Source: Ylistrum balloti
Lineage: Eukaryota
Assembly: GCF_031769215.1 (NCBI RefSeq)
Contig: NW_026782059.1
Span: 248,001-312,000, forward strand
Reading direction: 5' to 3'
DNA: 64,000 nucleotides
Part shown: positions 11,168 to 63,890 of the stretch, in pieces
Layout: every line of letters begins with the position of its first letter
Position numbering within the stretch: the first letter of the stretch is position 1
Program-made: the position numbers and the translations under genes
The notes under the pieces: generated by a model
Told to the model about the DNA's origin: nothing
The model's input: the letters and a program-made list of their open reading frames with translations, nothing else
The model's database searches: none

Positions 11168-14100
11168 CTATCTGATGTGTTTTTGGATCCAATCCCTGTA
11201 GCAGCTTATTCTAGTATAGACACTAGGATGATTGACGGCACAGCCAAAATGACCAAATGACGTAACGCCAACAAGCACTTTCCCACAGCTGAGTGCTCCA
11301 CCGCTGTCACCCTACAAAAATGAGAACGGAAATACATCGTATATACTATAAATCAAATCATTACGAATTTTAACAGTTACCTTAGCAGAAGGTGAAGGAC
11401 GGTAAAGCTAGCAGAAGGTGAAGGACGGTAACGCTAGCAGAAGGTGAAGGACGGTAACGCTAGCAGAAGGTGAAGGACGGTAAAGCTAGCAGAAGGTGAA
11501 GGACGGTAACGCTAGCAGAAGGTGAAGGACGGTAAAGCTAGCAGAAGGTGAAGGACGGTAACGCTAGCAGAAGGTGAAGGACGGTAAAGCTAGCAGAAGG
11601 TGAAGGACGGTAACGCTAGCAGAAGGTGAAGGACGGTAACGCTAGCAGAAGGTGAAGGACGGTAAAGCTAGCAGAAGGTGAAGGACGGTAACGCTAGCAG
11701 AAGGCGAAGGACGGTAAAGCTAGCAGAAGATGAAGGACGGTAACGCTAGCAGAAGGTGAAGGACGGTAAAGCTAGCAGAAGGTGAAGGACGGTAAAGCTA
11801 GCAGAAGGTGAAGGAGGTAAAGCTAGCAGAAGGTGAAGGACGGTAACGCTAGCAGAAGGTGAAGGACGGTAAAGCTAGCAGAAGGTGAAGGACGGTAACG
11901 CTAGCAGAAGGTGAAGGACGGTAAAGCTAGCAGAAGGTGAAGGACGGTAACGCTAGCAGAAGGTGAAGGACGGTAAGGAGCTAGCAGAAGGTGAAGGACG
12001 GTAACGCTAGCAGAAGGCGAAGGACGGTAAAGCTAGCAGAAGGTGAAGGACGGTAACACTAGCAGAAGGTGAAGAACGGTAACACTAGCAGAGGTGAAGG
12101 ACGATTAGTAACATTAGTTTAAGGAGGCAAGGCATGATAGAACAAAAAGAAAGAGTTTAAATGATGGCAACAAACTATTCCAATTTCTGCAATGTTGATT
12201 CTCAATAACAAAAAAACCACAAAGAGACACACAGGCGTCTAATTCTGAAAGGCGCACACATAAGCAACCTTTCTGTGCTTATAAAATATAGCAAACGCAC
12301 GCCTTACAATTATCATCTACATTGGAAACATGGAGAAATTACTCTAAACTTGCTACGTCATTGCAACTACAACTTTCCACGGTTACGGTATATCACCTGT
12401 ACGCTCGGTTGCTATTTAGTTAGAACATGTACGTGCAATTTTACCGTGATCAACACACCTACATGGTTTATCTAGCAGATTATAAAAATGTTCAGAATCA
12501 TACATATATGTACCTAGGTTCATTTTAACATTTACTAACAATCGTTATTTCACGTTTAGTTATCGAAATCTGACGAGACCTATATTGAAAAGTCTTGTAA
12601 TGATGGCTATTTTCGAACATGTGCTTGGAATTGTACAGTGGCGGTCTAAGAAAATGGATGCATATATTAAGCTAGTTATATTAAATGGCTTTTGAATATG
12701 TAGGTAGGTTAAAATAAGTTTGTCCCTGTTGATGTATCAGTTAAAACTTTCACACGGTTTTGAATTATTTAAAACATTGTCTGAATGCCGTCGCTAAAAT
12801 GTCGTGTTTTGATATTGGGAGGATGTCTGCCATCCACCACGGCATTGTGAGGACAGAAAACAAATCACGGGTAGAACCTTTAGGACCAAGGAACTCGAAC
12901 AAACATGCGATCGTAGTATTCTAACTTAGGCATGAAAAGTGTCAGAATGTTTCAGTTACGTAGGACTTACAAAGCAAGCTCCATTATATCCGGTGTACAC
13001 ACACACATGACTTTTCTTGATAAAGCTTTTACCCGCCCTCTTCTTACAGTCTGACACAGTGAGTACTTTGGTCCGTGCCTTCTGCAGTTTGTTGGTACGA
13101 ATTAATGCTGAAATGAATATATTTATTTTCAACAGCGTATTATCATTTAAGAACAAGAGGCCCATGTATATATGGCTCGCTCTTACTTTAGCTCGCTGAA
13201 ATTGCTTCATCAAAACTTAATGGAAAGTGTTTAGGCCCCGCCCCTTAGTCCGATGGGGATCAGATGTACTGTTTATACAAAAGTAAGTTCCTTTTACCCT
13301 TGCAAGCTTCAGACCAAAATTGAGGCAAAATTCAATAATTCTTAACGAACAAGAACACTGGCTGTATTTTCCCTGCTGTAACTCACTCCACCCTCCCCAG
13401 GGGGCCGAGACCCACTGTTCCTCTTATTTCCTAATTAATTCCTCTTGTCCCAAAAATGCTTGCAAATTTGAACATAATCCTTACATTCCTACACAAGTAG
13501 AAGGATTTTCAAATATTTGCTCATTTAGTATACTAGACTCACTCCTCCACCCCCACTCCCCCCAACTCCCCCCAACAACAAATGGGCTTAGGGTGCCGTG
13601 ACACACTTTACCATTGATTTCCCTTCAGCAAACAATGCAAGTCCAACTTCACTCCTACAAGAGAATAAGGACTTGAAGAATATGCTCTATTGCTGCCATT
13701 GGGTCCCGCCCTTCCTGCGACAGGGGGTCGTGATGGCCGATCGTTTACATAACATTTATTTCTCTTCACTCAAGGATACTTCAGACCAAATTTGGGCAGA
13801 ATTCAAACACTCCTACAGTTGAGGAACATTTCTGGTTTTGGGCCCCGCCACTCCTCCTCTGGACGGGTATGACCCGCATGTTATACAACATTGATTTACC
13901 TTACCAAACAATACTTAAGGCCAACTAAGTGTAAAATCCAATATCTCGTATTGCTATCGAATTTGCTTTATGTTTTTAATGGGCCATACCCCTTCTTAGT
14001 GGGCCGAGACACACCACTTATACAAAATTGATTTTCCCTTAACCCAACAAGGCTTCAAACAAAATAAAGACAAAATCCTATCACTATTTCCCTTTAGGGC

Positions 14101-20700: not shown

Positions 20701-21564
20701 TTCGGCTGTATGCCTGTTGACTAGATTGTTCAACAGGTGGCAAAAAGCGTTCCTAACTAACGTGCAAGCCCTCTTCCGGCGATGTAACTCAACCTACGAA
20801 TTAGTGGTAATTGGAGGATTAAGTAGAGTAGAGGACAGAGTTAATTTCATGGCGGGTAAACATTCTTAATAACGATTATATTTTTAAAATAAAAACTCCT
20901 TTCGTTAAGATATAAACAGAAATGCCTTGTCTTTCTTATCAACCTGTTTTTGTTAAATGTTGAAGTAATGGAATTCAACAGAGCTTATTGTAATAGTCAA
21001 AGACTACAGAAATGCGACAGAGCTGTATTATAATGACTAAAGTCTAATAAAATAAGCCAGAACTGTGTTTTAGAGGCATTGACTCTCACGTTAAACACTT
21101 TACCAAGAGTCATATGGTGCTGATACATATTAAATTAGTACTTATCGCATCTGTCTCCATTACATTTAACTCGCATGACTGCGTGTTTTCCTATAAGTTC
21201 AGTTCAATATACACAGCTGATCACGAAAGACTTTATAACATTTCCTTTAACTAGAAAATGTTCGTAAGACATGCAACTTCAACATCCCCACTCCCTTGCA
21301 TACAATATGTATATTTGGAGAGGTTCTGGAGACACGTTTTATTGACATTGAACGGACGGACGGACAGGGGTAACACTATCACACCATATAACCCCTCCCC
21401 TGTAAACTCCTGAAAGTACAATTATCTTGTTATCTTCGTTCAGAGTGAAAAGTTATGTTCTTTCATGATCTGCATGTATTTGTACAAAAAATAACAGTAA
21501 TTTGAATACAAACCTTACATAGTGTGTACAATGATATCACATTTCACAGAATAACACAATTTTT

Positions 21565-22210
21565 GTATACAGACATAATACAATTTTATACAGTGATAAC
21601 ACAATTTTATACAGTGATAACACAATTAATACAGTGATAACACAATTTTATACAGTGATAACACAATTTTATACAGTGATAACACAATTTATACAGTGAT
21701 AACACAATTTTATACAGTGATAACACAATTAATACAGTGATAACACAATTTTATACAGTGATAACACAATTTATACAGTGATAACACAATTTTATACAGT
21801 GATAACACAATTAATACAGTGATAACACAATTTTATACAGTGATAACACAATTTACAGTATACAGTGATAACACAATTTATACAGTGATAACACAATTTT
21901 ATACAGTGATAACACAATTTATACAGTGATACAGTGATAACACAATTTTATACAATTAATACAGTGATAACACAATTTTATACAGTGATAACACAATTTA
22001 TACAGTGATAACACAATTTTATACAGTGATAACACAATTAATACAGTGATAACACAATTTTATACAGTGATAACACAATTTTATACAGTGATAACACAAT
22101 TTATACAGTGATAACACAATTTTATACAGTGATAACACAATTAATACAGTGATAACACAATTTTATACAGTGATAACACAATTTTATACAGTGATAACAC
22201 AATTAATACA
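21565..22210. repeat. 20-21-bp minisatellite, about 30 copies
   Basis: Unit ATACAGTGATAACACAATTT(T), with an AATTA variant recurring periodically. Confidence 0.95.
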
Positions 22211-27640: not shown

Positions 27641-27885
27641 GTAAGTAGTAATGGCCTATCATCTGTTTGTAACGATACAGGCAGTAGAATACGAATTGGA
27701 GCTGTGTCAATAAAGAAATTGGCCAGTTTGATATTTACTAGGCAATCTTACAGTGAAAATAGTGAAAAGTATGTTCTAGTGAAAAACCAATATCTACCTA
27801 TATTTTCAGCTAAAGTATCTTCCTGTGAACATGTAATTTAAATACAAGTTTTGTTACATAAACATTTATTTTTCAGTGTGACCGA

Positions 27886-30800
27886 ATGGTAGACATCATG
27901 GCAACCTCTCAGGGGCAGAGCCAGGTGTCCGAGGCTCTGAAACAGTATGTTCAGCGGGACCTAAAGGACAAGCAGATTCTGGTGGTTCCTGAGGGCAAAT
28001 ACAAAGGCTGGGTTCCCCGAAGCATCTACAGTCTAGATTTGGATGAAGTCTATCTTCCTTTTCTCCGACTTCAGTCCTTTCCTGTAGGTGGGACTTCTCT
28101 TGGAACTTTAACTAAAATGAAAGTGTTTGAAGCTGTAGGAAATTATCTGTTCAAGCTTCCATCAGCATTTGGGAACTGTAAAGATTTAAAAACATTAAAC
28201 CTGAGTTTTAATTACTTCAACCGTCTGTCTCCATCTGTTTTCAAGCTAGAAAATTTGACGGAGTTGGATGTTAGTAACAATGAACTTACAGAGTTATCAT
28301 CTGATGTCGGCCAAATGAAGAATCTGAAGGCTTTGAACCTTAGTGGGAATATGCTGTCAGGAGTACCTGATGAGTTGTCTAAATGCAAAGCCTTGGAGAA
28401 TGTTAATCTCTCCAGAAAATGGTACCCTCGGGATGGTGGAATGACAGAGCTACCAAGTGCAGCTTGCAGCCTGCCAGAATTACGACAGCTTGATGTCAGT
28501 TGGCACCAAATTCATACCATCCCAGATAATGTGGGCTCTCTCACCAAGCTGCAATATCTTAACTTGAAAGGTAACTTCTTAAAAAATGTATCGGAAAACA
28601 TCACACAATGTGTTCGCCTACAAGTGTTAGATTTATCTGGAGCTATGAAACTCAATTCTGTGATTCCCGAGCAGATCCTTATGCTCTCTGAACTTAAAGT
28701 GCTTAATTTAAGTGGGAACTACTTCACTGAACTACCTAAGGAAGTGGCTGGCCTGAAAAAGCTGGAAAAATTTGTGATGAGAAGAAATGCATTACTACGA
28801 CTCCCTGATTCTATTTTTGATCTGGAATTCTTAGAAACTCTTGAACTCAGTGACAACTATTTATATGAAATCCCCCCAGCTGTTCAAAATTTGAAAAACA
28901 TTCGTTATATTGATTTACAAGGGAACAAACTGACTGGTTTACCAGATGAACTTGGCAGATGTTTCAGTCTAGTCCATTTGTCTTTAGCATGTAACGAATT
29001 AACTAGTGTGCCAGATTCCATATGCAGGCTTTTAAAATTACAAGAGTTGAGTTTAGATCACAACCAATTGAAGGAACTACCAATGTTGTTGGATAAACTA
29101 GCTCTCCTGGAAAAATCAGGACGTCTTAGTGTTTATGACAATTATCTTTCAAAACCACCACAAGAGATTTGCAATCAAGGAGTTGTCTCCCTTTTCCGCT
29201 TTTTGAAGGAGATGAGAATCAGTGAGGCAAAACACCGTCGTAAAATGATTCTGATTGGAGCAGCAAAGGCTGGAAAGACAAGTCTGAGAAATGCGTTGAT
29301 GCTAGGTCACTCCAAACTTGCTGCTGAGCATGAAAGGACCTGGGTTTTAGAACGCCATCTGTGGGAGCCTGAACCTAGTCTGCGTGTACAGATCTTGGAC
29401 TTTGGCGGTCATCACATATATTCTGCTGCTCATCACATGTTTTTGACTCCAGAAGCCCTGCATCTGGTGGTGTTTGACCTAGCTAAGTATGAGGAGGACA
29501 AATATGATACCATGGTAGGTGATTGGATTGATGCAATCGCTGATCGTGCCCCAGGGGCCCACATCATGGTGGTGGGTACACATGCAGATCTTTGTGCCAA
29601 TGAAGAGGTGAAATCACGAATTAATCACATTATACAGAAGATGAGCGCTGATGAGAAGGCAAAAATTGATGATCTCAAGTTGTCTCTAGAGAAAGCTAAA
29701 ACAGAACTTATGAATCTGACTGGCAAGGAAAGCAACACTAAATTTGAGGATATCGATGCTCAGAGGAAGCGGGACAAAGTCAGTGGTCTGCAGCGTGTAT
29801 TAAATATGCGTGTGACCTTAGCCAGTAGAGTGGAGGTCGTCAGTTGTGCTGACACACTTGATGGCGTGGATAATCTGCGTGCATTGCTGCAACAGAAACT
29901 CAAAGAGACGGATGAGAAACCCCTCCCGAAGTCCTGGTACAAATACCTGCTTGGTATTCAAAAGAAAAAGCAAAAAATCCTGCACTGGCAGCAGGCTTTG
30001 AGTATATTTAAGGATATCATGGACACTATGAACCAGTCAATGATCTCCTTAGAGGGCTCAGCAGAGTCCAGTTTAGATATGGTATTGCGATACCTCCATT
30101 CAACTGGCGAAATTGTCTGGTACCACGATAATCCTCGTTTACGTAGTATTATCTTTCATCGACCAGAAACTCTAGTGGAAATGTTGAGGGCAATATTCCG
30201 GCATGACTTTGAGAAGGTCGTCCAATTTAATGATACTTATGGGCGATTAGCAAACTTAAGTCTACACAAGTTTGAAGAAATGAAGGTAGACTTTTTGGAA
30301 CAAGGTCTGATGACAGTGGAACTATTACACTACTGCTTGTTACACTTCCAGCTTACCACAGATGCACGTGACATGTTCATCGACTTGATGCTCAAGTTTG
30401 ACCTGTGTTATGAGGTACCAAAACTTGCTGGAGCACCTATGACCTTTGCATCCAGCAGGATCCTCCGTTTCCCATGGTTCCTCAAGAGTGAAGTGCCAAC
30501 TAATTTCACTACGCAGTGGCCATTAGCAATTCCGTCGGACATAATTCAACTCTGTTATCGTCTCCAGTTTAAGAAGAGACTTCCACCAAATTTATTTGAG
30601 AAATTCTCCGCTCGTCTTCAGACTCACATCATGACTCGACATGACTGGAAAAATGGTGTGTTAGCCAAACGAAACCGCACAAAATTGCTTGTTACCAGGG
30701 AGGCTGTGGATGTGTCGTCTGGTGGTCGTGTGGATGTGTCAGTGTCTGTACGCGGAAGTGACCTACAGGAGCTGTGGTTAGTCATGCTTGGTACCTATGG

Positions 30801-33089
30801 TGACATGATCACGTTGCTGCAAGAATGGCCCTTCACTCGGTACGAGCAGTGGCTATTGTGTTCACACTGCCTGATCATGGGTGATGATGAGCCATTCCTC
30901 TACCCTGGCGAGGTGCTTCAGACTTTATGTCCTCGTGGCCACTATCAGTTAACATCTTGTAGAAAGGCCAAAGACGTACCTATTCCTGCCTGTTTCCTGT
31001 TTCCACTTGATCCTGGTAAGTTTTGTATACAAATTGATGTGTATGGAATAAATGACATGGTATTTTTCTAAATCTAGTTCTACATTGAAAATAATAAACA
31101 TTGCATCTATTGATCATGACATTCAGTTGACCCTTAACCTTGACAGTTGGCAATATCAGAAGTCAAATTAAAAACTCAAAGGGTCAGAATGTATATGTGA
31201 AAAAGACATGTCCAATCAAATACATAAGTCAAAATTCATTAATTAATGTCTAAAACATAGTCTGATGGGTTTAATAGATGCCATATCATTGATGAATGAA
31301 GGAAGATAGCTGTGTAAATGTTTTCCCTTTGTAAAGGATATATTTTATATGTGTCAGAATATCCATGTTTATTACTCTGCATGCTGGACTCGAATATTAG
31401 TTTTCTGTCATATTTGTGGAATGTTTATAACTAACTGATATTCAAAAAGATCTCAAACCTTCATGTTGAAGTGTGTGTTAAACTGTTTATTAAATAAAAT
31501 TACATATGTATAACATGCAAGAAATACATATTGCAAAGGAATATCATTTCTTTGCTTCTAGCAGTCTTGGCATAGAAGTCATGCTCTACAGCACTTTAGA
31601 GCAGAAATACTTATCATATCATTTACATGTTATCCCCCGCCCAACAAAGTTGTTGGGAGATATTTAAATGGGTTCTGTCCGTCTTTCTGTCCTTCCGTCA
31701 GTCTGTGCCGGATGCTGCTTTCCACATGATATCTTTTGAAGGACTGGCAGAATTTTTATGAAACTTGGTTGGTACACTTGTTACCTTAATCCCTTGTCCA
31801 AGTTTGATTATCGTCAAATTCTGCGCATATTTAATGAGGCTGCTATGACCTGATTGGCTGATTTTTTAATGTATATGTTTATGTATATATTTTACAAATA
31901 AACATGGGCTGGGGATCTTGAGGACTGCGTATTTTTTGTGAAGTGTCTTTCCTACATTATGTGTGATTGATAGAAATTGGTATATTCATACGAAATTACC
32001 AAGTGAGATCTGATTTTTTCAGAGTATCAAGAAGACATTGCGGAGCACATCAAGGTGGTGAAAGAGTTTCTACTCTCTACCTATGATACTGTTGATGGAG
32101 GAGGCAACTACATACAAAGTAAGCATTCATATTTATTTGCAGTGACATTAGTATATATTTCATTGTGATCATGTTCTGCTGATCAGATTTCTAAAACTTC
32201 TATCGAGTTCTCTCAAATCATACTTTGCAAAAGTGTACTGACAGTGTTATGTGTGTTTAGCTTACTCAAGCTGCAGAGTTTTCAATATTGATCATATTTA
32301 CAGGGTTACTGTCAAACCTCGGCCTTAGCTACATCGCAGCCCGTTGTGGTGCTGAATGGTCGTTGATGGCCTTAGCATTGGGACTTACCCAGCCAGAAAT
32401 AGAACAGATTCAGCTGGACAATCCCTACCAGACAGTCAAACAGATCACCACTGCACTGGTTCGTTGGCGGGATCGACGCCACAACACGACAGAGGATGCC
32501 GTTCTCAGTGACTTGCTAACTGCATTGCAAACAGCTGGTAGACAGGATTTGGTAGATGACCTGGAGGAAAAGTTCCATATACAGGGTAAGTATTTGTCAT
32601 CCTTCTCCCAAAATATTGTAATTGTTCCCACACCAAAACACTCAGCAACGGGAAATGGCCCTAATTGTAAACAATAACATTTTAGAGGCAGGTATTTGGC
32701 TAATGCATAGTCCAGAGTGAGTTTAGTTCCCCTACCAATAATTCTTGTGATTTGTCAGAAAAGTGGAGATCTGGCTGGTGCAGATAATATCCTGTGTGTG
32801 TTACTATCAATGACTTTAAGAGACAAGAGCAAATTGCCTTTATCTAATAACGGCATGACATATCTCCAGAAAAATGTTGTTTGTAACATTTTGTATCAAA
32901 TTGTTTTGTAATGATTGGTAATGAAATCAGAATAGCTCTCATATTTAGTTGTTTAATACAGAGGGACCAGTTACAAGTATACATGTTGACTGATTGCATT
33001 TGCCATCTAGTACTGTTGTAAAGGGAGGGTAATGGGCAAATGTAATACAATATTGAATATCTTTTGTTTTTGTTTCAGTGAACATTTAG
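27886..33089 (+). CDS. MFHAS1: MFHAS1-like Roco protein: LRR-Roc(GTPase)-COR plus C-terminal death domain, 1172 aa
   Basis: Exons 27886-31015, 32023-32118, 32304-32585, 33079-33089. All introns are GT-AG and phase 1; total 3519 nt. About 14 LxxLxLxxNxL repeats; P-loop GAAKAGKTS; G2 ERT; G3 DFGG; G4 THAD; an MFHAS1-type helical insert in Roc; COR; C-terminal CxxC..P..YPGE..L..P.G. Exon 3 encodes a death-domain pattern (L..IA...GAEW..MA..LGL...EIEQIQLDNP......IT.AL..WR......L..AL...GR.DL). Orthology is not tested phylogenetically. Confidence 0.9.
31630..31930. mobile_element. Mollusc-type non-autonomous interspersed repeat in the first coding intron of the Roco gene
   Basis: Starts TTATCCCCCGCCCAACAAAGTTGTTGGG followed by a TGTCCGTC-type microsatellite. 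Related pieces lie at about 5470-5580, 9630-9900 and 46300-46900. Confidence 0.45.
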
Positions 33090-33240
33090 TGGGACAGCAC
33101 TACCTCATACTCAGTCAGCCTTCAGCAATGTTTTCTTAAATGTGACCAAGAAATTTTAAAGATTTGCTGAATAACATCATATTACCCCTGGGAATCGGAT
33201 GGCTTCTGAGAAGAGATATCTCATCCCAGAAAAGAACATT

Positions 33241-33625
33241 AAGAAAACTATTGTTAGGAAGCTTTCACCATTAAGAAAACTCTTGTGAGGAGTCTTTCAC
33301 CACTAAGAAAACTCTTGTGAGGAGTCTTTCACCAGTAAGAAAACTCTTGTGAGGAGTCTTTCACCAGGTAAAAAACTCTTGTGAGGAGTCTTTCACCACT
33401 AAGAAAACTCTTGTGAGGAGTCTTTCACCACTAAGAAAACTCTTGTGAGGAGTCTTTCACCAGGTAAAAAACTCTTGTGAGGAGTCTTTCACCAGGTAAA
33501 AAACTCTTGTGAGTAGTCTTTCACCAGGTAAAAAACTCTTGTGAGGAGTCTTTCACCAGTAAGATAACTTTTGTGAAGAGTCTTTCACCAGTAAGATAAC
33601 TTTTGTGAGGAAGCTTTCACCAGTG
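33241..33625. repeat. 32-bp minisatellite, about 12 copies, probably in the Roco 3' UTR
   Basis: Unit AAGAAAACTCTTGTGAGGAGTCTTTCACCACT with variants, starting 150 bp after the stop codon. Confidence 0.92.
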
Positions 33626-37915: not shown

Positions 37916-40359
37916 GAGATCCCTTGAATGCTTCCATTTCAGCAAACAAGAGTGATTCTTAACAGTTGGAAAAACTTGTTTCCCAATAATTGCAAAATAA
38001 ATAAAGTTTATTTAATGCATTTGTGTGGTTTTCCTTTTGCCACAAAACCAACAAAATTTTCTACACGACAAATATTTCATTTGATACAGTATAGTAGTCA
38101 TAGCTGCTCCGTGTAGGTAAAAGTAAAGATTTCAATAAGTAGTGATGTAGACTGTAACAGGAAGTGATGCCACACTTTGTGTTATCAGTTTGGTCTGCAT
38201 ATTACAAGGCAACCCCATTTCTTTAAATGATTTTACATGATCATAACTGATCTTGTGATGATAATTTGAAATATTGATCATGCCTTATATCAGAGTTGTT
38301 CTCTTGTCCCAAGTGAAATTTTATTTTTTAAATACTCTTCGCCTTTTTTAGTCGCCTTGATTTCCTCTTTCTATTTTGTATAGATTACAGTGGTGAAAGA
38401 TTGGAACATTCAAACACTTGTTAGTTGATGTTTGTTTTGCCACTTTAAAATGTCGGAGACTTTTCACAACAATTATTAAAAAATCGCTTTAAATTTCAGA
38501 TTAGGTTAAACTGCACAGATGAAAAATTAAAGTGAAACTGTTGATCTTAATGGATCATTTGTCGCTACAATTCATGGACAAGTTTGCAGAAATGTACATC
38601 ACATGTGAAATATATATGATGAGTTACAATAAGATTAAGATTATTTCAATGAATTTCTATCATTGAGGTTAAAATGACTTGGGGTCCATACTATCAATTG
38701 CTGGTGTTTATGTATAAGTGTTTAGATAGAATACAAAGTGGTTGAAATTATTTATTTATCAGTGACTTCTGTAAGATTTTTTCAAAGCTTGTTTAGAACA
38801 CAACGTCCATAATTTTGGTGAGTCCTATTACTAAGAGATATTGTGGGTTCTCATAGTCTGGGTGATAGACACAGGAAGAGCAAGTGACCAGGACTTAAAT
38901 ATCAGAGTCCCAAAAATCACTGATTAATGTATATTCTTTATTGTGACTAATAAAACTCTATTTGTACGTATTACACCTGTATATTATTTCATAAAATTAC
39001 CCTTCAATATTTACTTGTTACTGAGATTTAAGATGCAGTATCATTGACAGCTATTTTATACAGCCTCACAGTTTTTTCAAATTCAATTGGTTTTTTATGT
39101 TATCACATTAGGAGTCGTGCAACTATTTTGATCCATAGAGTCTGGAATGTGTGATTTTTAGAACGAATATGATATAATTAATGTTTGGGAGGTTTGTTAA
39201 TCTACGCATTTTAATTAAAGGATGTAGTGCTTATTGGGTAAATACTGTAACAGATAATGTGTTCTCTCCTTGTTCAAATTTTGATGTTTTATCAAAAGCT
39301 TCCATTGATGAAAAGGAATGTATTTTCCATTTATGGAAATCATGAATTAAACTAAGGTCTTTTGTGAATGTTATTTTCAAACTGTTTTGGTTTTGGTTTC
39401 TTTACACATCCTTAGAGATAAGAAAGAGTGGAACTCTCAAACTTTAGCAGTATTTTACAACTTAGATTTATGAAAAGAAAACACAAGTTTGTATGGTGTT
39501 AGAGCATATTATATACTTAAGCCAGTACATGATTTATCATGAAACACTTATTTTTAAAAAAAGTTATTTATTATGATGACACAAGATCACTGGTGTGAAC
39601 AATGTGCACTATTTTTGTGAGTGTGTTATTAATCAGGATGCTTTAACAATTAAAGTAACAAGACTGATTGTATTTTTATTATTTCATTCTGGGTCTATTT
39701 TGATAAAACTTGAACCTGGAACAGTGATCGAGTGATATATTGACAGGGTAACACTTTGGTAAAATTTTATATTCTTTAAAAAAAAATTGGTAAAATTTTA
39801 CATTCTTTATAAAATTTGGTAAAATTTTATGGAAATGCAATGAAATTTCTTTTTTTTATAATCATTAGATATATTTTTCTCCTCAAGTGAAAAAAAACCT
39901 ATTGTCGGCCTTTATGTGTAAGGTAATTGGACATATTTTTCTCCTCAAAAGAGAAAACCTGATCATCAATGTTTGAGTTTCAGGTCACAAATAAGTCTTA
40001 GCTTGATCCAGTTAGCTCTGTCAAAATATTTGAGTGAATGTCAGAGTTGTTTGAATAAGTATGCAAGTTTACTTAGTGTAATGCATGCCAGAAAATATAT
40101 ATGCTTTTGTGTCAAAGTCGTCACGTATACTGGTAATGTTATCTCATTGAAAATATTTAAATCTATGAACTTTAAGCTCTGCTGTTTGACAAATAAACAG
40201 TTGAAGTCTTCCTATGTGTTTGCGTATTTTAGAGCTGGTTTAGCTCAAGCTTTTTCTATCCTGTATGCCGTTTCAATTTACAAAGTGATGTTTAGAGAGT
40301 TTTATTTCAAATACCCAACTTTTGTAAAAATGAATGCATCATTGTCAGTTTACTTTTGG

Positions 40360-41030
40360 CTCGGCAAGGCACCTGTGTGAGGTTAACATTGGCTTGGCCA
40401 AGCATCCGTGTCAGGTTGACATTTGCTCGACCAGGCATCTGTGTCAGATGTCTGCATCAGATTGGCTCGGGCAGGAGTTTATCATGTTAAGATTGGCTCA
40501 CTCACGAGTCTGTGTCAGGTTAAGATTGGTCATTCAAGAGTGTATGTTAGGTTAAGATTGACTAAGGCGGGCATTTGTGTCAAATTAAGATTGGCTCACT
40601 TTAGTGTCTATGTCAGGTTAAGTTTGGCTCGGCAAGGCATCTGTGTCAGGTTAACATTTGCTCGACCAGGCATCTGTGTCAGGTTGACATTTGCTCGACC
40701 TTAAATCTGTGTCAGATGTCTGCATCAGATTGGCTCGGGCAGGAGTTTATCATGTTAAGATTGGCTCACTCACGAGTCTGTGTCAGGTTAAGATTGGTCA
40801 TTCAAGAGTGTATGTTAGGTTAAGATTGACTAAGGCGGGCATTTGTGTCAAATTAAGATTGGCTCACTTTAGTGTCTATGTCAGGTTAAGATTGGCTCGG
40901 ACAGGCGTCTGTCAGGTTAAGATTGGGTCACTCTAGTGTCTGTGTCAGGTTAAGATTGGCTCACTCACGAGTCTGTGTCAGGTTAAGGCTGGTTCGGGCA
41001 AGAGTGTATCAGGTTAAGTTTGATTCATTC
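40360..41030. repeat. Composite tandem repeat: degenerate TGTCAGGTTAAGATTGGCTC-type subunits in a 268-bp duplication
   Basis: ORFs at 40423 and 40691 are nearly identical and 268 bp apart. A short subunit recurs throughout. Confidence 0.85.
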
Positions 41031-44000
41031 AAGCCAGGATATTTTTCTGGTATTTGGATATATCTCAGTTAGATTACCTTTCCGAATTCATCGAAAAGGA
41101 ACATTCCTTTTTTAAATCTATTCTTGGTTGCATTTAGGTCAAATCAGGCGGTTACACGTACTTTTGGGGAACTCAGAATTAAAAGTTAATCATAAGTATT
41201 ATGAGCTGGATCAAATATGGCTGCTGAAGATCAGATAGGAGAAAATATTTTCCTGAAGACTACGAATGCGATTTTATCGAGGAAACTTTTGCATCAATCA
41301 TTAAGCTCCAACATTCTCGTGACATGCTGTTATGATGATGCCGTTTGAAATGGGCGGGGTAGAATGGCTTACAGCCTATCGTCTACAAAAATAGTCATTT
41401 GGACCACGGGATGTTAATGATAGGAAAACCAAAGGTATACAGTTTGAGAACAAAAATAGTCATGAATAATTATCTTTAACATTTAGCATTTAAAACGCAA
41501 AGGAGAATTTCATGGTAGAATCCCTTCCACTGAAATATCGCGCCGCTACATTGGCCATAGTACGGGTATCCAGCTTCCACAATATTCTAAACTGTTAAAC
41601 AACCAAATTTGTTATATTTAAATGTCAGAATGTAACTGGATTGGTCAGGTAATCAAAATTATTACCTTCAATTAAACAGAAAATCTATATTATTTGTTAT
41701 GGAGAAAGGCACCAAGGCGAGGTCGCCCTTCACCTCCTGTTCGGTCATGTAGAAAACACATCGCATTTATACCAGCTTTTAGCTGGTCTCGATATGAGAC
41801 ATTCATTAACATACATTGTTTTTCTGTCCTACAATACAGTAATGTAACCAGTATACAATCTATACATGGAACAGTGAATATCTATTTTTACAATAGGGTG
41901 TCATAAAGTTTGGATCGGTTGATTTACCTCACGCTCCGGTAGATTTGTTGTCTTCCATGCCAGCATACAGTCAAGTGATTAATGTGTGATGATAAATATT
42001 TCATATCTTATACATCTATTCATAAAAAAGCAACGTATTGAATGTCTCTTCGTTGTTGTTTACTGGTGTGGAAACTTTTTTTTCAGAAATTTTAAATGAA
42101 GCGTGTTATGTTGAAATATATGTAAAATATATCTTATATTTATACTTCTTTAAAAATGATAATCGTCATCCATTGGACGTTACACATACAGACGGAACAG
42201 CCCGATAACTAATGGAATAGCAAAATAGCTGATTCTATTTTGGCAGCAAAGGGCGTCCGACCAGACAGATGCCGAAGTATAAACATCAGCTTTATTAGTA
42301 CGCCTGAATAGTGAATACACACCGGAAATATTAATGGTTTCATTTTCTATTTCTTCTGGTACGAAAGTATAAATTTAAGGTTACGTCATATTGAGCAGTT
42401 TCAGTGTAGTACTAGCATGGTGGTTTGCCGATAATCAGTGAAGACGTCTTATTTTTTCCCCTGATTGTCTTTTTGTTCGGTGAATATTATACAAATAAAA
42501 AGTTAAGATAGATTAATGATGACGCGCCTGATCTTTACCGGTTTTATAATATGAAATGGTTGAACTGGGAATATGCAATTGATATCACAATTTAACAAAA
42601 GTCACGTGCAAGGGATTTATCCAATGGCAGAAGACTTACATCCACATTATATGGTATATTTACATATTAGTATAATTATTTTTGACAATTTGATAACGAA
42701 ATGACGTCACGTATTCGCGGAATACGTCTTGACGTCATAATAACCTTATTGCGTCAAAAAGAATCCTACTTGTGTGACGTTGTATTGTACGTTTTCTAAA
42801 TATTCCCCAAATTTATTCCATTTCATACCATGCTTTATAAAACGCGTCTTATGATTGAAAACGGTGACACGAGAAATGGAAACTCATGGGAATCCTAAAT
42901 GTGCATCTATACATCATTGATAAGTATAACAGGAAGCAAGACAGAATTGACGTCATTATCTTGATAGCTACACGTATGTCAATATGACTAAGATCAACCA
43001 GAAAACTAAATTATTGGGCTTTCATGACCCTTGTCACGGATTGGATATATAGAAAATTTCGACAGAAACATGAACACTATTACATGTATAAGACTTCTGC
43101 ATCGATACAAATCATTTTTACCTGTCAGTTATTTCTAATTTTATCTTCATAACATGGGTTGGTCCTCTCGTATGACGTTCAGTGAGGTAGACACTAGTTA
43201 CAAGAGACAAAGAGAGATAGACTCAACAAACATACAATTGTACAGGCTTGTCTAAAGATAAAATCCATGCAGGACAGGTGTGATAATCAACATCCCCGGA
43301 AATGACGTGTTAAAACCATATCTACTATAAATATGTATTTAAGCAGTTTGGAAGTTATATACATTATTTATCAGCACACGTGTATATCTTGTATTGTATA
43401 CGTTCAACAACGGGGATTACTCTGCATTTTCACTATGATAAAACATCCTTCATGTAAAGACCATTATTTTGAATTGTTCAGGAAGTAACCCTTTACTTTC
43501 TCTCAGGCGTCCATTGATATATATACATATGTCACAGCGATGCGAGTCAACATCAATATTTTAACTCGATCCTAAAGAATAGCAAGTTGTCTTTGTAATG
43601 CATTTTGAATGGCGTGTAACGGTTTGTGTTTTCCGTCCTGTCGTTTGGTAGTCAGGTGGCGACTCGACAAGAGAGATAAGCAAATACACGCAGGTCTGGT
43701 ATGTCAACATTTGTTGTAATTGTATTGTAAATACCGACCATGGCCTGCTGTGGTGCCCTCTGACGATATAGATTTTGTCCCATGACATTTTAAATACGTA
43801 TAGAAATGGTTGGTACTCACTGTTGTGTGGAGTGGCCCTGCGAGAAAGCCACGTATCGACCAAAGACCCCACCTACCTGTACAGACGAGATCGATACACG
43901 ATTCAGTCTATACATGGCCCACGTGACCCACACCCGTTACCTTGTTATCGTATCTACTAAAAACTCATTATAATAAAACGCTATTTAAAATTACTATATG

Positions 44001-44689: not shown

Positions 44690-45840
44690 CAGTGCCGTAT
44701 TGTCACAAGGAGGCATCAGTTCCGTATTGTCACAAGGAGGCATCAGTTCCGTATTGTCACAAGGAGGCATCATTTTCGCAGTATCACAACGAGACATCAG
44801 TTTCACACTATCACAAGGAGACATCAGTTCCACACTATCAAAACGAGACATCAGTTTCACACTATCAAAAGGAGACATCAGTTTCACACTATCACAAGGA
44901 GACATCAGTTCCACACTATCAAAAGGAGATATCAGTTCCACACTATCACAAGGAGACATCAGTTTCACACTATCAAAAGGAGACTTCAGTTTCACACTAT
45001 CACAAGGAGACATCAGTTCCACACTATCAAAAGGAAACATCAGTTCCACACAATCAAAAGGAGACATCAGTTCCACACTATCAAAAGGAGACTTCAGTTT
45101 CACACTATCACAAGGAGACATCAGTTCCACACTATCACAATGAGGCATCAGTTTCACATTATCACAATGAGGCATCAGTTTCACACTATCACAATGAGGC
45201 ATCAGTTTTACACTATCAAAAGGAGATATCAGTTCCACACAATCACAAGGAGGCATCAGTTTCACACTATCAAAAGGAGACATCAGTTCCACACTATCAC
45301 AAGGAGACATCAGTTTCACACTATCACAAGGAGACATCAGTTCCACACAATCAAAAGGAGACATCAGTTTCACACTATCACAAGGAGACATCAGTTCCAC
45401 ACTATCAAAAGGAGACATCAGTTCCACACTATCACAAGGAGACATCAGTTCCATACTATCAAAAGGAGACATCAGTTTCACACTATCAACAGGAGACATC
45501 AGTTTCACACTATCAAAAGGAGACATCAGCTCCACACTATCACAATGAGGCATCAGTTTCACACTATCAAAAGGAGACATCAGTTCCACACTATCAAAAG
45601 GAGACATCAGTTTCACACTATCAAAAGGAGACATCAGTTCCACACTATCAAAAGGAGACATCAGTTTCACACTATCACAATGAGGCATCAGTTTCACACA
45701 ATCAAAAGGAGACATCAGTTCCACACTATCAAAAGGAGACATCAGTTCCACACTATCACAATGAGACATCAGTTCCACACTATCAAAAGGAGACATCAGT
45801 TCCGAACTATCAAAAAGAGACATCAGTTCCGCACTATTGC
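44690..45840. repeat. 27-bp minisatellite, about 42 copies
   Basis: Unit CACACTATCAAAAGGAGACATCAGTT(T/C). It produces 9-aa periodic ORFs on both strands. Confidence 0.95.
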
Positions 45841-48424: not shown

Positions 48425-51040
48425 AAAGATATGAGGGTTAACCAGGGACATATGAGGCCGAGAGTCAAGGAACATACTATCGACCAGGGTCATATGAGGC
48501 CGAGAGTCAAGGAGCACACTGTTAACCAAGGACATATGAGGCCGATATTCAAGGAATACACTATTAACCAGGGACATATGAGGACGAGAGTCAAGGAACA
48601 CACTATCGAACAGGTACATGTGAGGACGATATTCAAGGAACACACTATTAACCAGGGTCATATGATGACGAGAGTCAATGAACGCGCTATCAACCAGGGT
48701 CATATGATGACAAGAATCAAGGAACACACTATTAACCAGAGTCATATGAGGACGAGAGTCAAGGAACACACTATCAATCAGGGAGGTATGAGGACGAGAG
48801 TCTAGGAACACACTATTAAACAGGGACATATGAGGACGATAGTCAAGGAACACACTATTAAACAGGGACATGTGAGGACAAGAATCAAGGAACACACTAT
48901 TAACAAGAGTCATATGAGGACGATATTCAAGGAACACACTATTAACCAGGGTCATATGATGACGAGAGTCAATGAACGCGCTATCAACCAGGGTCATATG
49001 ATGACAAAAATCAAGGAACACACTATTAACCAGAGTCATATGAGGACGAGAGTCAAGGAACACACTATCAATCAGGGAGGTATGAGGACGAGAGTCTAGG
49101 AACACACTATTAAACAGGGACATATGAGGACGATAGTCAAGGAACACACTATTAAACAGGGACATGTGAGGACAAGAATCAAGGAACACACTATTAACAA
49201 GAGTCATATGAGGACGAGAGTCAAGGAACACACTATTAACCAGGGACACATGAGGACGATAGTCAAGGAACACACTGTTAACAAGGGTCATATGAGGACA
49301 AGAATAAAGGAACACACTATTAAAAAGAGTCATATGAGGACGAGAATCAAGGAACACACTATTAAACAGAGTCATATGAGGACGAGAGTCAAGGAACACA
49401 CTATTAACCAGAGTCATATGAGGACGAGAGTCATGGAACACACTATCAACCAGAGTCATATGAGGACGAGAGTCATGGAACACACTATCAATCAGGGTCA
49501 TATGAGGACGATAGTGAAGGAACACACTATTAAACAGAGTCATATGAGGACGAGAGTCAAGGAACACACTATTAAACAGAGTCATATGAGGACGAGAGTT
49601 AAGGAACACACTATTAACCAGAGTCATATGAGGACGAGAGTCATGGAACACATTATCAACCAGAGTCATATGAGGACGAGAGTCATGGAACACACTATCA
49701 ATCAGGGTCATATGAGGACGAGAGTTAAGGAACACACTATTAACCAGAGTCATATGATGACGAGAATCAAGGAACACACTATTAACCAGAGTCATATGAG
49801 GACGATATTCAAGGAACACACTATCTACCAGAGTCATATGAGGACGAGAGTCAAGAAACACACTATTAACCAGACTCATATGAGGACGAGAGTCAAGAAA
49901 CACACTATTAAACAGAGTCATATGAGGACGAGAGTCAAGGAACACACTGGCAACCAGGGACATATGAGGACGAGAGTTAAGGAACACACTATTAACCAGA
50001 GTCATATGAGGACGAGAATCAAGGAACACACTATCAAACCAGAGTCATATGAGGACGATATTCAAGTAACACACTATTTACCAGAGTCATATGAGGACGA
50101 GAGTCAAGGAACACACTATTAACCAGACTCATATGAGGACGAGAGTCAAGGAACACACTAGCAACCAGGGACATATGAGGACGAGAGTTAAGGAACACAC
50201 TATTAACCAGAGTCATATGATGACGAGAATCAAGGAACACACTATTAACCAGAGTCATATGAGGACGATATTCAAGGAACACACTATCTACCAGAGTCAT
50301 ATGAGGACGAGAGTCAAGGAACACACTATTAACCAGACTCATATGAGGACGAGAGTCAAGAAACACACTATTAAACAGAGTCATATGAGGACGAGAGTCA
50401 AGGAACACACTGGCAACCAGGGACATATGAGGACGAGAGTTAAGGAACACACTATTAACCAGAGTCATATGAGGACGAGAATCAAGGAACACACTATCAA
50501 ACCAGAGTCATATGAGGACGATATTCAAGTAACACACTATTTACCAGAGTCATATGAGGACGAGAGTCAAGGAACACACTATTAACCACACTCATATGAG
50601 GACGAGAGTCAAGGAACACACTATCAATCAGGGTCATATGAGGACGATAGTCAAGGAACACACTATTAACAAGAGTCATATAAGGACAAGAGTCAAGGAA
50701 CACACTAGCAACCAGGGACATATGAGGACGAGTGTCAAGGAACACACTATTAACCAGAGTCATATGATGACGAGAAACAAGGAACACACTATTAACCAGA
50801 GTCATATGATGACGAGAATCAAGGAACACACTATTAACCAGAGTCATATGAGGACGATATTCAAGGAACACACTATTAACCAGAGTCATATGATGACGAG
50901 AATCAAGGAACACACTATTAACCAGGGACATATGAGGACGATTTGTCAAGGAACACACTATTAACCAGAGTCATATGATGGAGAATCAAGGAACACACTA
51001 TTAACCAGGGGCATATGAAGATTTGTCAAAAAACACACCA
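48425..51040. repeat. 42-bp minisatellite, about 62 copies, with higher-order structure
   Basis: Unit GAGGACGAGAGTCAAGGAACACACTATTAACCAGAGTCATAT. 294-bp and 463-bp higher-order duplications are visible. Confidence 0.95.
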
Positions 51041-58042: not shown

Positions 58043-58574
58043 GACGTTGTCTCTCAAGCATATTAGTCAGTCGAAGCCATGCAGAAATAATATGTCTGTA
58101 AGGAAAACGTGGAAGGAAGGTCTTCATAATGACCACTGGCAATACAATTTCATTTTCTTTACACAAAATTTACACGACGTTGTCTCTCAAGCATATTAGT
58201 CAGTCGAAGCCATGCAGAAATAATATGTCTGTAAGGAAAACGTGGAAGGAAGGTCTTCATAATGACCACTGGCAATACAATTTCATTTTCTTTACACAAA
58301 ATTTACACGACGTTGTCTCTCAAGCATATTAGTCAGTCGAAGCCATGCAGAAATAATATGTCTGTAAGGAAAACGTGGAAAGAAGGTCTTCATAATGACC
58401 ACTGGCAATACAATTTCATTTTCTTTACACAAAATTTACACGACGTTGTCTCTCAAGCATATTAGTCAGTCGAAGCCATGCAGAAATAATATGTCTGTAA
58501 GGAAAACGTGGAAGGAAGGTCTTCATAATGACCACTGGCAATACAATTTCATTTTCTTTACACAAAATTTACAC
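58043..58574. repeat. 133-bp near-perfect tandem repeat, 4 copies
   Basis: Identical ORFs start at 58129, 58262 and 58395. I saw one substitution, in copy 3. Confidence 0.95.
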
Positions 58575-63711: not shown

Positions 63712-63890
63712 NNNNNNNNNNNNNNNNNNNNNNNNNNNNNNNNNNNNNNNNNNNNNNNNNNNNNNNNNNNNNNNNNNNNNNNNNNNNNNNNNNNNNNNNN
63801 NNNNNNNNNNNNNNNNNNNNNNNNNNNNNNNNNNNNNNNNNNNNNNNNNNNNNNNNNNNNNNNNNNNNNNNNNNNNNNNNNNNNNNNNNN
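63712..63890. other. Assembly gap (N run)
   Basis: 179 consecutive N bases. Confidence 1.

What the first reader, a model, noticed from the sequence alone, without database searches (positions are those of the whole stretch)
27886..33089. LRR-Roc-COR-death domain protein: a candidate GTPase-switched immune or death receptor
Seen: an MFHAS1-like LRR-Roc-COR chain with intact G motifs is spliced in frame to a full death domain. Established: vertebrate MFHAS1 has no death domain; DAPK1 has Roc-COR-DD but with a kinase and ankyrin repeats; PIDD has LRR and DD without Roc; Roc-COR modules dimerise in a nucleotide-dependent way. Inference: the sensor-switch-effector layout parallels NLRs, with Roc-COR in place of NACHT, and could nucleate death-domain assemblies. 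Roco-DD fusions may already be reported in other invertebrates, so novelty needs checking.
Basis: partly seen in the sequence, partly recalled or inferred. Interest (0 to 1): 0.7.

Follow-up and report, generated by a model that had tools for sequence, protein, structure and literature searches.

The report
Scallop LRR-Roc-COR-death-domain (MFHAS1-like) gene
This is a real, intact scallop gene for a GTPase-switch protein (leucine-rich repeats, Roc-COR, then a death domain); it belongs to an old, unstudied invertebrate branch of the MFHAS1 family, and its function has never been tested.

Summary
Four GT/AG exons (27886-31015, 32023-32118, 32304-32585, 33079-33089, + strand) give a 1172-aa protein. 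It is identical to the database protein 'MFHAS1 homolog [Ylistrum balloti]'.

**Domains.** About 15 LRRs, a Roc GTPase with invariant G1-G5 motifs, COR-A, COR-B, a short linker, and a death domain (DD) encoded by a single exon. The DD is closest to the CRADD, PIDD and ankyrin DDs.

**Splicing.** No RNA run exists for this species. Transcript contigs from another scallop are colinear across the three exon junctions.

**Distribution.** The architecture is not unique.
- Near-full-length homologues of similar length were found in bivalves, gastropods and cephalopods; 23 of 27 score Pfam Death.
- LRR-Roc-COR-DD also occurs in an annelid, a sea anemone and many amphioxus paralogues.
- Lingula and amphioxus carry CARD at the same position. 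Some amphioxus paralogues carry a trypsin-like peptidase, or GT and OTU domains elsewhere in the protein.
- Vertebrate MFHAS1 stops 8-23 residues after COR-B.

**Literature.** Reviews say only deuterostomes have MFHAS1 and only DAPK1 has a DD. A 2014 review noted Trichoplax Roco proteins with CARD or DD. I found no functional study.

**Verdict.** The sensor-switch-effector reading is plausible and has comparative support, but it is untested. The LRRs are conserved, not diversifying. A new detail is an invariant DxxD-G motif in the disordered linker, which is a candidate caspase site. This is a new variant of a known kind, of moderate interest.

The parts
27877..27885 (+). Likely 5'UTR part of the first coding exon, after an AG acceptor at 27875-27876. 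At least one non-coding exon lies further upstream and was not located.
   Evidence: A polypyrimidine tract plus AG sits just upstream. The transcript contig L001 aligns from window 27876 onward, and its first 124 nt do not align nearby.
27886..31015 (+). Coding exon 1 (3130 nt, ends in phase 1): N-terminal conserved region, LRRs, Roc, COR-A and COR-B (aa 1-1043 plus the first base of codon 1044).
   Evidence: ORF and Pfam hits. GT donor at 31016. In another individual 9 of 10 CDS variants are synonymous.
28033..29175 (+). Leucine-rich repeat domain, about 15 repeats (aa ~50-430).
   Evidence: LRR_8 at 1.1e-35 and LRR_14 at 2.9e-29. A regular strand-helix repeat with pLDDT around 90 in the full-length AlphaFold2 model. 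Mean pairwise identity among molluscs is 0.51.
29242..29865 (+). Roc GTPase domain (aa 453-660) with G1-G5 motifs. It contains a helical insert of about 70 aa (aa 572-640) between G4 and G5.
   Evidence: Pfam Roc 7.8e-12 and Ras 4.5e-8. Motifs invariant in 27 homologues. The insert helices appear in the model.
29866..31014 (+). COR-A (aa ~661-870) and COR-B (aa 880-1043). COR-B ends in the conserved motif PAxxxxP(L/P).
   Evidence: Pfam COR-A 3.6e-10 and COR-B 1.3e-7. Foldseek matches of the COR-B model to LRRK1, LRRK2 and Chlorobium Roco COR. The end motif is shared with Lingula, amphioxus and vertebrate MFHAS1.
31016..32022 (+). Intron 1 (1007 nt). It contains a high-copy interspersed repeat at about 31637-32030.
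   Evidence: GT..AG ends. Summed contig depth is 447-764x here against about 10x for the flanks in DNA run X1.
32023..32118 (+). Exon 2 (96 nt, phase 1-1): linker aa 1044-1075, a conserved amphipathic helix followed by the DxxD-G motif.
   Evidence: Splice sites. Colinear with transcript contigs. Helix 1046-1062 in the model.
32085..32099 (+). Codons for D1065-T-V-D1068-G1069, a candidate caspase-type cleavage motif.
   Evidence: Both Asp are invariant in 27 of 27 mollusc homologues and the next residue is G, S or A. This is the only conserved D-x-x-D pair in the 1172-aa protein. It lies in the only pLDDT<50 loop between COR-B and the DD.
32304..32585 (+). Exon 3 (282 nt, phase 1-1). It encodes the whole death domain (aa 1076-1169; Pfam Death 1085-1164).
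   Evidence: Pfam Death 8.1e-12. Helical bundle, pLDDT about 90. Foldseek: PIDD DD 2of5_H (TMt 0.79) and ankyrin-G DD 4o6x (TMt 0.82). phmmer: CRADD DD 3.3e-8.
33079..33089 (+). Coding start of exon 4 (the last three residues V-N-I, then stop TAG). The 3'UTR follows and includes a 32-bp tandem repeat at 33240-33624.
   Evidence: AG acceptor and reading frame. The spliced model is identical to P0001. Tandem repeat.

Best explanation
The locus is an intact four-coding-exon gene of the scallop Ylistrum balloti. It is under purifying selection and encodes a cytosolic Roco-family protein with the order LRR, Roc, COR-A, COR-B, linker, death domain.

Shown here:
- The domains are genuine and the GTPase motifs are complete.
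- The DD is a single symmetric (phase 1-1) exon joined in frame.
- Close homologues of similar length occur in bivalves, gastropods and cephalopods.
- Related LRR-Roc-COR proteins in an annelid, a sea anemone, a brachiopod and amphioxus carry a DD or CARD at the same C-terminal position. Vertebrate MFHAS1 has nothing there.

Inferred mechanism: the LRR solenoid binds a conserved ligand or partner. That event is coupled to the Roc-COR nucleotide and dimerisation cycle known from other Roco proteins. The cycle controls the availability or clustering of the C-terminal DD. The DD then recruits DD adaptors of the CRADD/PIDD/ankyrin type into an oligomeric platform for caspase or NF-kB-type signalling. 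In logic it would be an NLR analogue, with Roc-COR in place of NACHT. The invariant DxxD-G motif in the disordered linker probably lets a caspase sever the DD from the sensor body, as feedback in either direction.
For: - Gene model identical to P0001.
- Orthologous spliced transcripts.
- 9 synonymous against 1 non-synonymous variant in another individual.
- Pfam domains in 27 homologues, Death in 23 of 27.
- Invariant G1-G5 motifs.
- AlphaFold2 COR-B+DD model with pLDDT 89.6, whose fold matches LRRK/Roco COR and the PIDD and ankyrin DDs.
- CRADD and PIDD are the best PDB sequence hits.
- An exhaustive profile search found COR-B-to-DD colinear hits in Owenia, Actinostola and Branchiostoma.
- CARD or a trypsin-like peptidase occupies the same position in Lingula and Branchiostoma paralogues.
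- In the Roc-COR tree the animal proteins form one clade, and DD-bearing lineages sit on every deep branch.
- Mammalian MFHAS1 modulates TLR2/TLR4, NF-kB and JNK signalling (PMC4658032, PMC5520684, PMC6851511).
- The DxxD motif is unique and invariant, and it lies in the disordered loop.
Against: - There are no expression, induction, binding or cleavage data for any member.
- No RNA run exists for this species.
- The LRR domain is as conserved as COR (0.51 against 0.52 mean identity), and each mollusc species listed appears with one close homologue. This argues against a fast-evolving pathogen receptor and fits a housekeeping partner equally well.
- The DD is the least conserved domain (0.42).
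- DDs of the ankyrin and UNC5 type also act outside immunity and cell death.
- The full-length model has low confidence in the Roc P-loop region and pTM 0.50, so nothing can be said about DD docking.
- The DxxD motif is absent from the amphioxus and anemone linkers.
Confidence: 0.55

Rival explanations
1. It is a conserved housekeeping or developmental signalling scaffold, not an immune or death sensor. The LRRs bind a fixed endogenous partner. The DD serves as a constitutive protein-interaction or intramolecular regulatory module, as in ankyrins and UNC5, and the GTPase tunes localisation or turnover.
For: Each mollusc species listed appears with one close homologue, and these span the phylum at 44-83% identity. 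The LRR is as conserved as COR-A. Ankyrin DDs are among the best sequence and fold matches. Nothing in the window suggests an immune gene cluster; the flanks are tandem repeats.
Against: Paralogous expansions occur in Lingula and amphioxus, with effector swapping among DD, CARD and a trypsin-like peptidase. That pattern is typical of immune or conflict systems. The best DD hits are CRADD and PIDD, the PIDDosome pair. Mammalian MFHAS1 has TLR-linked roles.
Confidence: 0.3
2. The protein is chiefly a caspase substrate or decoy. The DD keeps the Roco body auto-inhibited, or tethers it to a death complex. Cleavage at DxxD-G is then the activating event, so the signal flows from caspase to Roco and not from Roco to DD.
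For: An invariant DxxD followed by G, S or A sits in the only disordered loop. A comparable DAVD lies just upstream of the DD in the annelid Owenia. The high pTM (0.83) of the COR-B+DD fragment model is compatible with DD docking on COR-B.
Against: The motif is missing in amphioxus and sea anemone proteins with the same architecture. No cleavage data exist. Conserved Asp residues could be structural.
Confidence: 0.12
3. It is a gene-model artefact. The DD exons would belong to another transcript, or the DD-less read-through form would be the only real product.
For: There is no RNA evidence in this species. The exon 1 ORF continues 18 codons into intron 1 to a stop. Argopecten has a predicted DD-less isoform X2 that ends right after exon 2.
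Against: Uninterrupted 1150-1260-aa ORFs with Death occur on 3.7-4.5-kb transcript-sized contigs from several molluscs. Two of these align colinearly across the window's introns. The COR-B-to-DD junction is conserved from anemone to amphioxus. The DD is under selection in 27 species.
Confidence: 0.03

Closest known systems
Vertebrate MFHAS1 (MASL1), the LRR-Roc-COR Roco protein
   Same: Same domain order, LRR then Roc then COR-A then COR-B, with no kinase. It is the best vertebrate hit (about 28% identity over 93% of exon 1, E about 1e-95). The COR-B end motif is shared. It falls in the same animal clade in the Roc-COR tree.
   Different: Vertebrate MFHAS1 stops 8-23 residues after COR-B and has no death-fold domain. 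The mollusc proteins group with the Lingula, Owenia and Actinostola proteins and two amphioxus proteins (support 100/97). Vertebrate MFHAS1 groups with a DD-bearing amphioxus paralogue (93/89). One-to-one orthology is therefore not shown.
DAPK1 (kinase, ankyrin repeats, Roc, COR, DD)
   Same: It is the only Roco group that reviews credit with a DD after Roc-COR (PMC6337361). The GTPase-then-DD order is the same.
   Different: No kinase or ankyrin repeats are present here, and LRRs take their place. DAPK1 was not among the hits whose identity I checked (28 of the 150 listed by the COR-B+DD profile search). No DAPK1 sequence was available for the tree.
PIDD1/LRDD and CRADD (PIDDosome)
   Same: PIDD also combines N-terminal LRRs with a C-terminal DD. 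The CRADD and PIDD DDs are the closest solved DDs by sequence (3.3e-8 and 2.3e-5). The PIDD DD is among the closest by fold (TMt 0.79, rmsd 1.9 A).
   Different: There are no ZU5 or UPA domains or autoprocessing sites. A Roc-COR GTPase lies between the LRRs and the DD.
NLR/STAND receptors and prokaryotic LRR 'AP-GTPase' conflict systems
   Same: The logic is tripartite: repeat sensor, NTPase switch and a swappable death-fold or enzymatic effector. Kaur et al. 2021 (PMC8195603) describe bacterial LRR-Roc-COR proteins with variable C-terminal effectors as counter-invader systems.
   Different: The switch is a Ras-like GTPase plus COR, not a NACHT or NB-ARC ATPase. The effector is C-terminal. The similarity is analogy of layout, not family membership.
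Trichoplax ROCO proteins with CARD or death domains; Aplysia ROCO-TIR and MyD88-like proteins
   Same: These are earlier reports that invertebrate Roco cores are fused to death-fold or TIR modules (PMC4104024; PMC9334734).
   Different: Those reports are domain-cartoon surveys. They do not describe the conserved LRR-Roc-COR-DD lineage of molluscs, its wider distribution or the DxxD linker.

Membership tests
Roco protein family | Roc (Ras-like) GTPase domain with G1-G5 motifs | tested here: met
   Pfam Roc 7.8e-12. GAxKAGK[T/S], T485, DFGGH, THxD and SCA are invariant in 27 homologues.
Roco protein family | COR domain immediately C-terminal to Roc | tested here: met
   COR-A 3.6e-10 and COR-B 1.3e-7. 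The COR-B model matches LRRK1, LRRK2 and C. tepidum Roco COR in Foldseek.
Roco protein family | GTP binding and nucleotide-dependent dimerisation | not testable with these tools
   Needs biochemistry. Only the motifs were checked.
MFHAS1 (vertebrate sense) | LRR-Roc-COR with no kinase, and MFHAS1 as the nearest vertebrate relative | tested here: met
   Domain scan. The best vertebrate hits are all MFHAS1.
MFHAS1 (vertebrate sense) | Protein consists only of LRR-Roc-COR and ends after COR-B | tested here: not met
   A 129-residue tail with linker and DD follows COR-B here. Frog, aye-aye and skate MFHAS1 have tails of 8-23 residues, and the two C-termini scanned (frog, aye-aye) show no death fold.
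MFHAS1 (vertebrate sense) | One-to-one orthology in a Roc-COR phylogeny | tested here: inconclusive
   Animal sequences form one clade against bacterial Roco. Molluscs and vertebrates fall in different sub-clades. No LRRK or DAPK1 sequences were available, and sampling was biased by the DD-containing query.
Death domain (DD subfamily of the death fold) | Sequence match above the Pfam PF00531 gathering score | tested here: met
   45.5 bits against a cutoff of 22.6, E 8.1e-12. 23 of 27 homologues match.
Death domain (DD subfamily of the death fold) | Six-helix bundle fold | tested here: met
   The model shows helices 1080-1165 at pLDDT about 90, preceded by a short helix at 1073-1077. PIDD DD TMt 0.79 and ankyrin-G DD TMt 0.82.
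Death domain (DD subfamily of the death fold) | Homotypic DD-DD assembly | not testable with these tools
   No multimer prediction or binding assay was available.
DAPK1 group | Ser/Thr kinase and ankyrin repeats N-terminal to Roc | tested here: not met
   No Pkinase or Ank hits in any of the 27 homologues. LRRs occupy the N-terminus.
PIDD1 | ZU5-UPA module with autoprocessing between LRR and DD | tested here: not met
   No ZU5 or UPA hit.
NLR/STAND receptors | NACHT or NB-ARC STAND ATPase | tested here: not met
   Only Ras-type GTPase families match the nucleotide-binding region. The resemblance is one of layout only.

The most novel reading that the evidence does not exclude
LRR-Roc-COR-death-fold proteins would be a third, ancient class of metazoan intracellular NLR-like sensors, dating at least to the cnidarian-bilaterian ancestor. 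In them a Roco GTPase replaces NACHT or NB-ARC and drives DD or CARD platform assembly. Vertebrate MFHAS1 would be a remnant that lost its death-fold output. In lophotrochozoans the DD would additionally be wired to caspases through a conserved DxxD-G cleavage site.
Probability: 0.3. Interest if true: 0.75.

Novelty: new variant of a known kind. Interest (0 to 1): 0.5.

Why it matters
Roco proteins (LRRK2, DAPK1, MFHAS1) matter for Parkinson's disease, cancer and inflammation, yet what their GTPase switch controls is still debated, and MFHAS1 is the least understood of them.

If the ancestral MFHAS1-type protein carried a death-fold output, three things follow:
- The vertebrate protein's TLR and NF-kB phenotypes gain an evolutionary rationale.
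- The published statements that only deuterostomes have MFHAS1, and that only DAPK1 has a DD, need correcting.
- Molluscs offer a one-gene system to ask how a Roc-COR switch controls death-domain assembly. No kinase is present, the G motifs are intact, and there is a single DD.

For bivalve aquaculture it is also a candidate node in cell-death and immune signalling.

Tried and rejected
- **RNA support in this species.** Laying it showed genomic DNA covering the introns. It served only to confirm the assembly and to count variants.
- **Word-based protein searches.** Searches with exon 1 and with residues 445-1172 found molluscs and then dropped to about 25% identity. On that evidence the architecture looked mollusc-specific. 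The exhaustive profile search overturned this.
- **Long ORFs at 44.6-46 kb and 48.4-51 kb.** They give biased Pfam hits with no matched stretches and lie in 27-bp and 42-bp tandem arrays. I rejected them as genes.
- **Literature searches using a minimum-terms option.** These returned noise. Stricter searches found no paper combining MFHAS1 with molluscs, and the single MFHAS1 plus Crassostrea hit was irrelevant. The amphioxus domain-shuffling paper PMC2575513 does not mention Roc, COR or GTPase.
- **Full-length AlphaFold2 model.** pTM 0.50 and low confidence in the Roc P-loop region. It was too uncertain to say where the DD docks.
- **DAPK1 or PIDD membership.** Rejected, because kinase, ankyrin and ZU5/UPA domains are absent.
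- **Earlier notes.** The scan's notes for this place were empty.


Full report
**1. What is in the sequence**

The + strand holds a 1061-aa ORF (27886-31071) and, 1.2 kb downstream, a 129-aa ORF (32288-32677). Pfam scores the first as multiple LRR families, Roc, COR-A and COR-B, and the second as a Death domain at 4.4e-12.

Reading the DNA shows canonical splice sites:
- exon 1 ends at 31015 (…CCTG|gtaagt);
- a 96-nt exon lies at 32023-32118;
- a 282-nt exon lies at 32304-32585;
- a terminal exon begins at 33079 and contributes three residues and the TAG stop at 33087-33089.

The joined CDS is 3519 nt and 1172 aa.

Exons 2 and 3 are both phase 1-1. The death domain (aa 1076-1169) is thus a single symmetric exon, which is the classic form for exon shuffling. 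Skipping it would keep the frame. An AG acceptor at 27875-27876, together with the start of the transcript alignment, indicates at least one upstream non-coding exon.

**2. Is the death-domain exon really joined to the Roco exon?**

No RNA run exists for this species in the index. The only holder (X1) is DNA, because its contigs run through the introns. X1 comes from another individual. Of its 10 differences inside the CDS, 9 are synonymous and one is R24Q, which shows purifying selection.

Splicing is supported by relatives.
- P0003 (84% aa identity, 1172 aa) sits on two Logan contigs of 4.3-4.4 kb from runs SRR26445937 and SRR26445938.
- Each carries the ORF uninterrupted. They align to the window as 27876-31013, 32020-32117 and 32304-32583, colinear across the three exon junctions. 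The alignment does not reach the 11-nt coding start of exon 4.
- A further homologue, P0008 (58% identity; its species was not determined), sits on a 4.4-kb contig from SRR13374877, and its protein cluster has 530 member sequences.
- Several more homologues of 1150-1172 aa lie on contigs of 3.7-4.6 kb.
- NCBI also predicts a DD-less isoform in Argopecten (P0002, 1080 aa) that ends just after exon 2, so DD inclusion may be regulated.

**3. The domains**

- *LRRs.* About 15 LRRs span aa 50-430, modelled at pLDDT about 90.
- *Roc.* Roc spans aa 453-660. In 27 near-full-length mollusc homologues G1 (GAxKAGK[T/S]), switch I T485, G3 (DFGGH), G4 (THxD, as in LRRK2-type Roc domains) and G5 (SCA) are invariant. 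A helical insert of about 70 residues separates G4 and G5.
- *COR.* COR-A and COR-B score in Pfam. A COR-B+DD fragment model (pLDDT 89.6, pTM 0.83) matches LRRK1, LRRK2 and Chlorobium Roco COR domains.
- *Death domain.* It scores 45.5 bits against a Pfam cutoff of 22.6 and folds as a helical bundle. It superposes on the PIDD DD (2of5_H, TMt 0.79, rmsd 1.9 A) and the ankyrin-G DD (4o6x, TMt 0.82). By sequence the nearest solved DDs are CRADD (3.3e-8), PIDD (2.3e-5) and ankyrin-3 (3e-5).
- *Absent domains.* No kinase, ankyrin, ZU5/UPA, NACHT or TIR domain is present.

**4.

The linker encoded by exon 2 consists of a conserved helix (aa 1046-1062) and then D1065-x-x-D1068 followed by G, S or A.
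- Both aspartates are invariant in 27 of 27 molluscs, while neighbouring positions vary and carry indels.
- It is the only conserved D-x-x-D pair in the whole protein. Only 8 columns in all are at least 90% Asp.
- It lies in the only loop with pLDDT below 50 between COR-B and the DD.
- The annelid Owenia has DAVD at the equivalent place. The amphioxus and anemone linkers are short and lack it.

This looks like an executioner-caspase-type site that would sever the DD from the sensor body. That is inference only.

**5. Distribution**

Word-based searches found homologues of about 1150-1175 aa in bivalves, gastropods and cephalopods. Those aligned are 44-83% identical, and 23 of 27 score Pfam Death at E<=0.01.

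I then searched a profile of COR-B+linker+DD exhaustively against 1.84 billion representatives. Pfam scans and name look-ups on selected hits followed. They show:
- the same LRR-Roc-COR-DD order in the annelid Owenia fusiformis (2607 aa), the sea anemone Actinostola and many Branchiostoma paralogues;
- LRR-Roc-COR-CARD in seven Lingula paralogues, and a two-CARD version in Branchiostoma;
- an LRR-Roc-COR-trypsin-like peptidase in Branchiostoma, and glycosyltransferase/OTU-bearing forms there as well.

In all of these COR-B ends in a shared motif (xA/V-x-L/F-V/I-Y/F-P). Frog, aye-aye and skate MFHAS1 stop 8-23 residues after COR-B, and the frog and aye-aye proteins show this motif.

A Roc-COR maximum-likelihood tree of 33 sequences, rooted on bacterial Roco, gives these results:
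- the animal proteins form one clade (100/100);
- molluscs group with Lingula, Owenia, Actinostola and two amphioxus proteins (100/97);
- vertebrate MFHAS1 groups with a DD-bearing amphioxus paralogue (93/89).

DD-bearing lineages occupy every deep animal branch. Parsimony needs 5 changes of death-fold presence, compatible with one gain and several losses.

Caveats apply. Sampling came from a DD-containing query. LRRK and DAPK1 were not available as outgroups. Several branches are long.

**6. What is known already**

- Reviews classify DD-bearing Roco proteins as the DAPK1 group only, and MFHAS1 as plain LRR-Roc-COR (PMC6337361).
- Civiero et al. [quoted passage not shown] - The Aplysia immunome paper notes ROCO cores fused to TIR or MyD88-like modules and suggests a GTPase-linked TLR cascade (PMC9334734).
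- Kaur et al. 2021 interpret bacterial LRR-'AP-GTPase'-COR proteins with variable C-terminal effectors as counter-invader systems (PMC8195603).
- No paper in the library combines MFHAS1 with molluscs.
- Mammalian MFHAS1 is linked to TLR2/TLR4, NF-kB and JNK signalling.

The general idea and scattered sightings therefore exist. The conserved mollusc lineage, the protostome and cnidarian distribution, the DD/CARD swap at a fixed junction and the DxxD linker are not described in what I could read.

**7. How it most likely works**

Shown:
- an intact GTPase switch between a conserved LRR solenoid and a bona fide DD;
- purifying selection on all parts;
- a modular C-terminal effector position across phyla.

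Inferred:
- ligand or partner binding at the LRRs is coupled to the Roc-COR nucleotide and dimerisation cycle, which is established for other Roco proteins;
- that cycle governs exposure or clustering of the DD;
- the DD nucleates a DD platform with CRADD/PIDD-type partners, leading to caspase or NF-kB-type outputs;
- a caspase may cut at DxxD-G as feedback.

Against a classical pathogen receptor, the LRR domain is as conserved as COR-A (0.51 against 0.52 mean pairwise identity), and each mollusc species listed appears with one close homologue. A conserved endogenous or danger-type ligand, or a housekeeping role, is as likely as pathogen sensing. I put about 0.55 on the GTPase-switched DD-scaffold reading, 0.3 on a non-immune scaffold, about 0.12 on a primarily caspase-substrate role and 0.03 on an annotation artefact.

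**8. Context from this genome**

Earlier notes of this scan describe a PDZ-PDZ-(dead Roc)-COR-DD gene and PIDD-like ZU5-UPA-DD scaffolds elsewhere in the same scallop genome.

In my data a Crassostrea virginica protein (P0123) has a degenerate Roc, COR-A and a DD. Its DD is 51% identical to the DD here, which is in the same range as the DDs of the mollusc homologues. This points to either a shared origin or a possible DD-DD partnership between an active and an inactive Roco protein. I did not test it.

**9. Verdict**

This is a new variant of a known kind (Roco family, MFHAS1-like branch, death-fold output). It is already present but unremarked in public annotation. Interest is moderate at 0.5.

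Noticed in passing
window 44703-45837 and 48438-51018: Two large tandem arrays: 27 bp x 42 copies, and 42 bp x 61 copies with a strongly A-rich + strand. They create long ORFs in several frames that are not genes.
   Followed up: partly
window 11383-12103, 21551-22204, 40343-41033, 58043-58574: Further minisatellites: 26 bp x 28, 21 bp x 31, a compound 33/66/268-bp array, and 133 bp x 4 at 99% identity.
   Followed up: no
window 33240-33624: A 32-bp x 12 tandem repeat begins about 150 nt after the stop codon, inside the presumed 3'UTR of the Roco-DD gene.
   Followed up: no
window 31637-32030 (intron 1): An interspersed high-copy repeat. Summed contig depth is 447-764x against about 10x for the flanks in the DNA run, with many short contigs and loose ends.
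   Followed up: no
window 63712-63890: A run of 179 N, an assembly gap or masked stretch.
   Followed up: no
P0002 (Argopecten irradians isoform X2), equivalent to window 32118/32119: A predicted DD-less isoform ends five residues after exon 2. In the window exons 2 and 3 are both phase 1-1, so exon skipping would also stay in frame. DD inclusion may be regulated by splicing.
   Followed up: partly
P0123 (Crassostrea virginica LOC111110883): A second mollusc Roco-DD protein with a degenerate Roc, COR-A and a DD that is 51% identical to the DD here. It is a possible paralogue or DD partner. It may correspond to the PDZ-PDZ-dead-Roc-COR-DD gene noted elsewhere in this scallop genome.
   Followed up: partly
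P0152, P0045, P0047, P0193 (Branchiostoma): Amphioxus MFHAS1-like paralogues carry a trypsin-like peptidase or two CARDs after COR-B, and others carry GT plus OTU domains. The effector repertoire on a Roco chassis is strikingly varied.
   Followed up: partly
P0127 (Acanthaster), P0129 (Patiria): Starfish proteins with 4 to 10 or more tandem death domains (one also has ZU5) were the strongest DD-only hits of the profile.
   Followed up: no
window 29599-29805 (aa 572-640): A helical insert of about 70 residues lies between G4 and G5 of the Roc domain. It is the least conserved stretch of the protein (0.36 identity).
   Followed up: no
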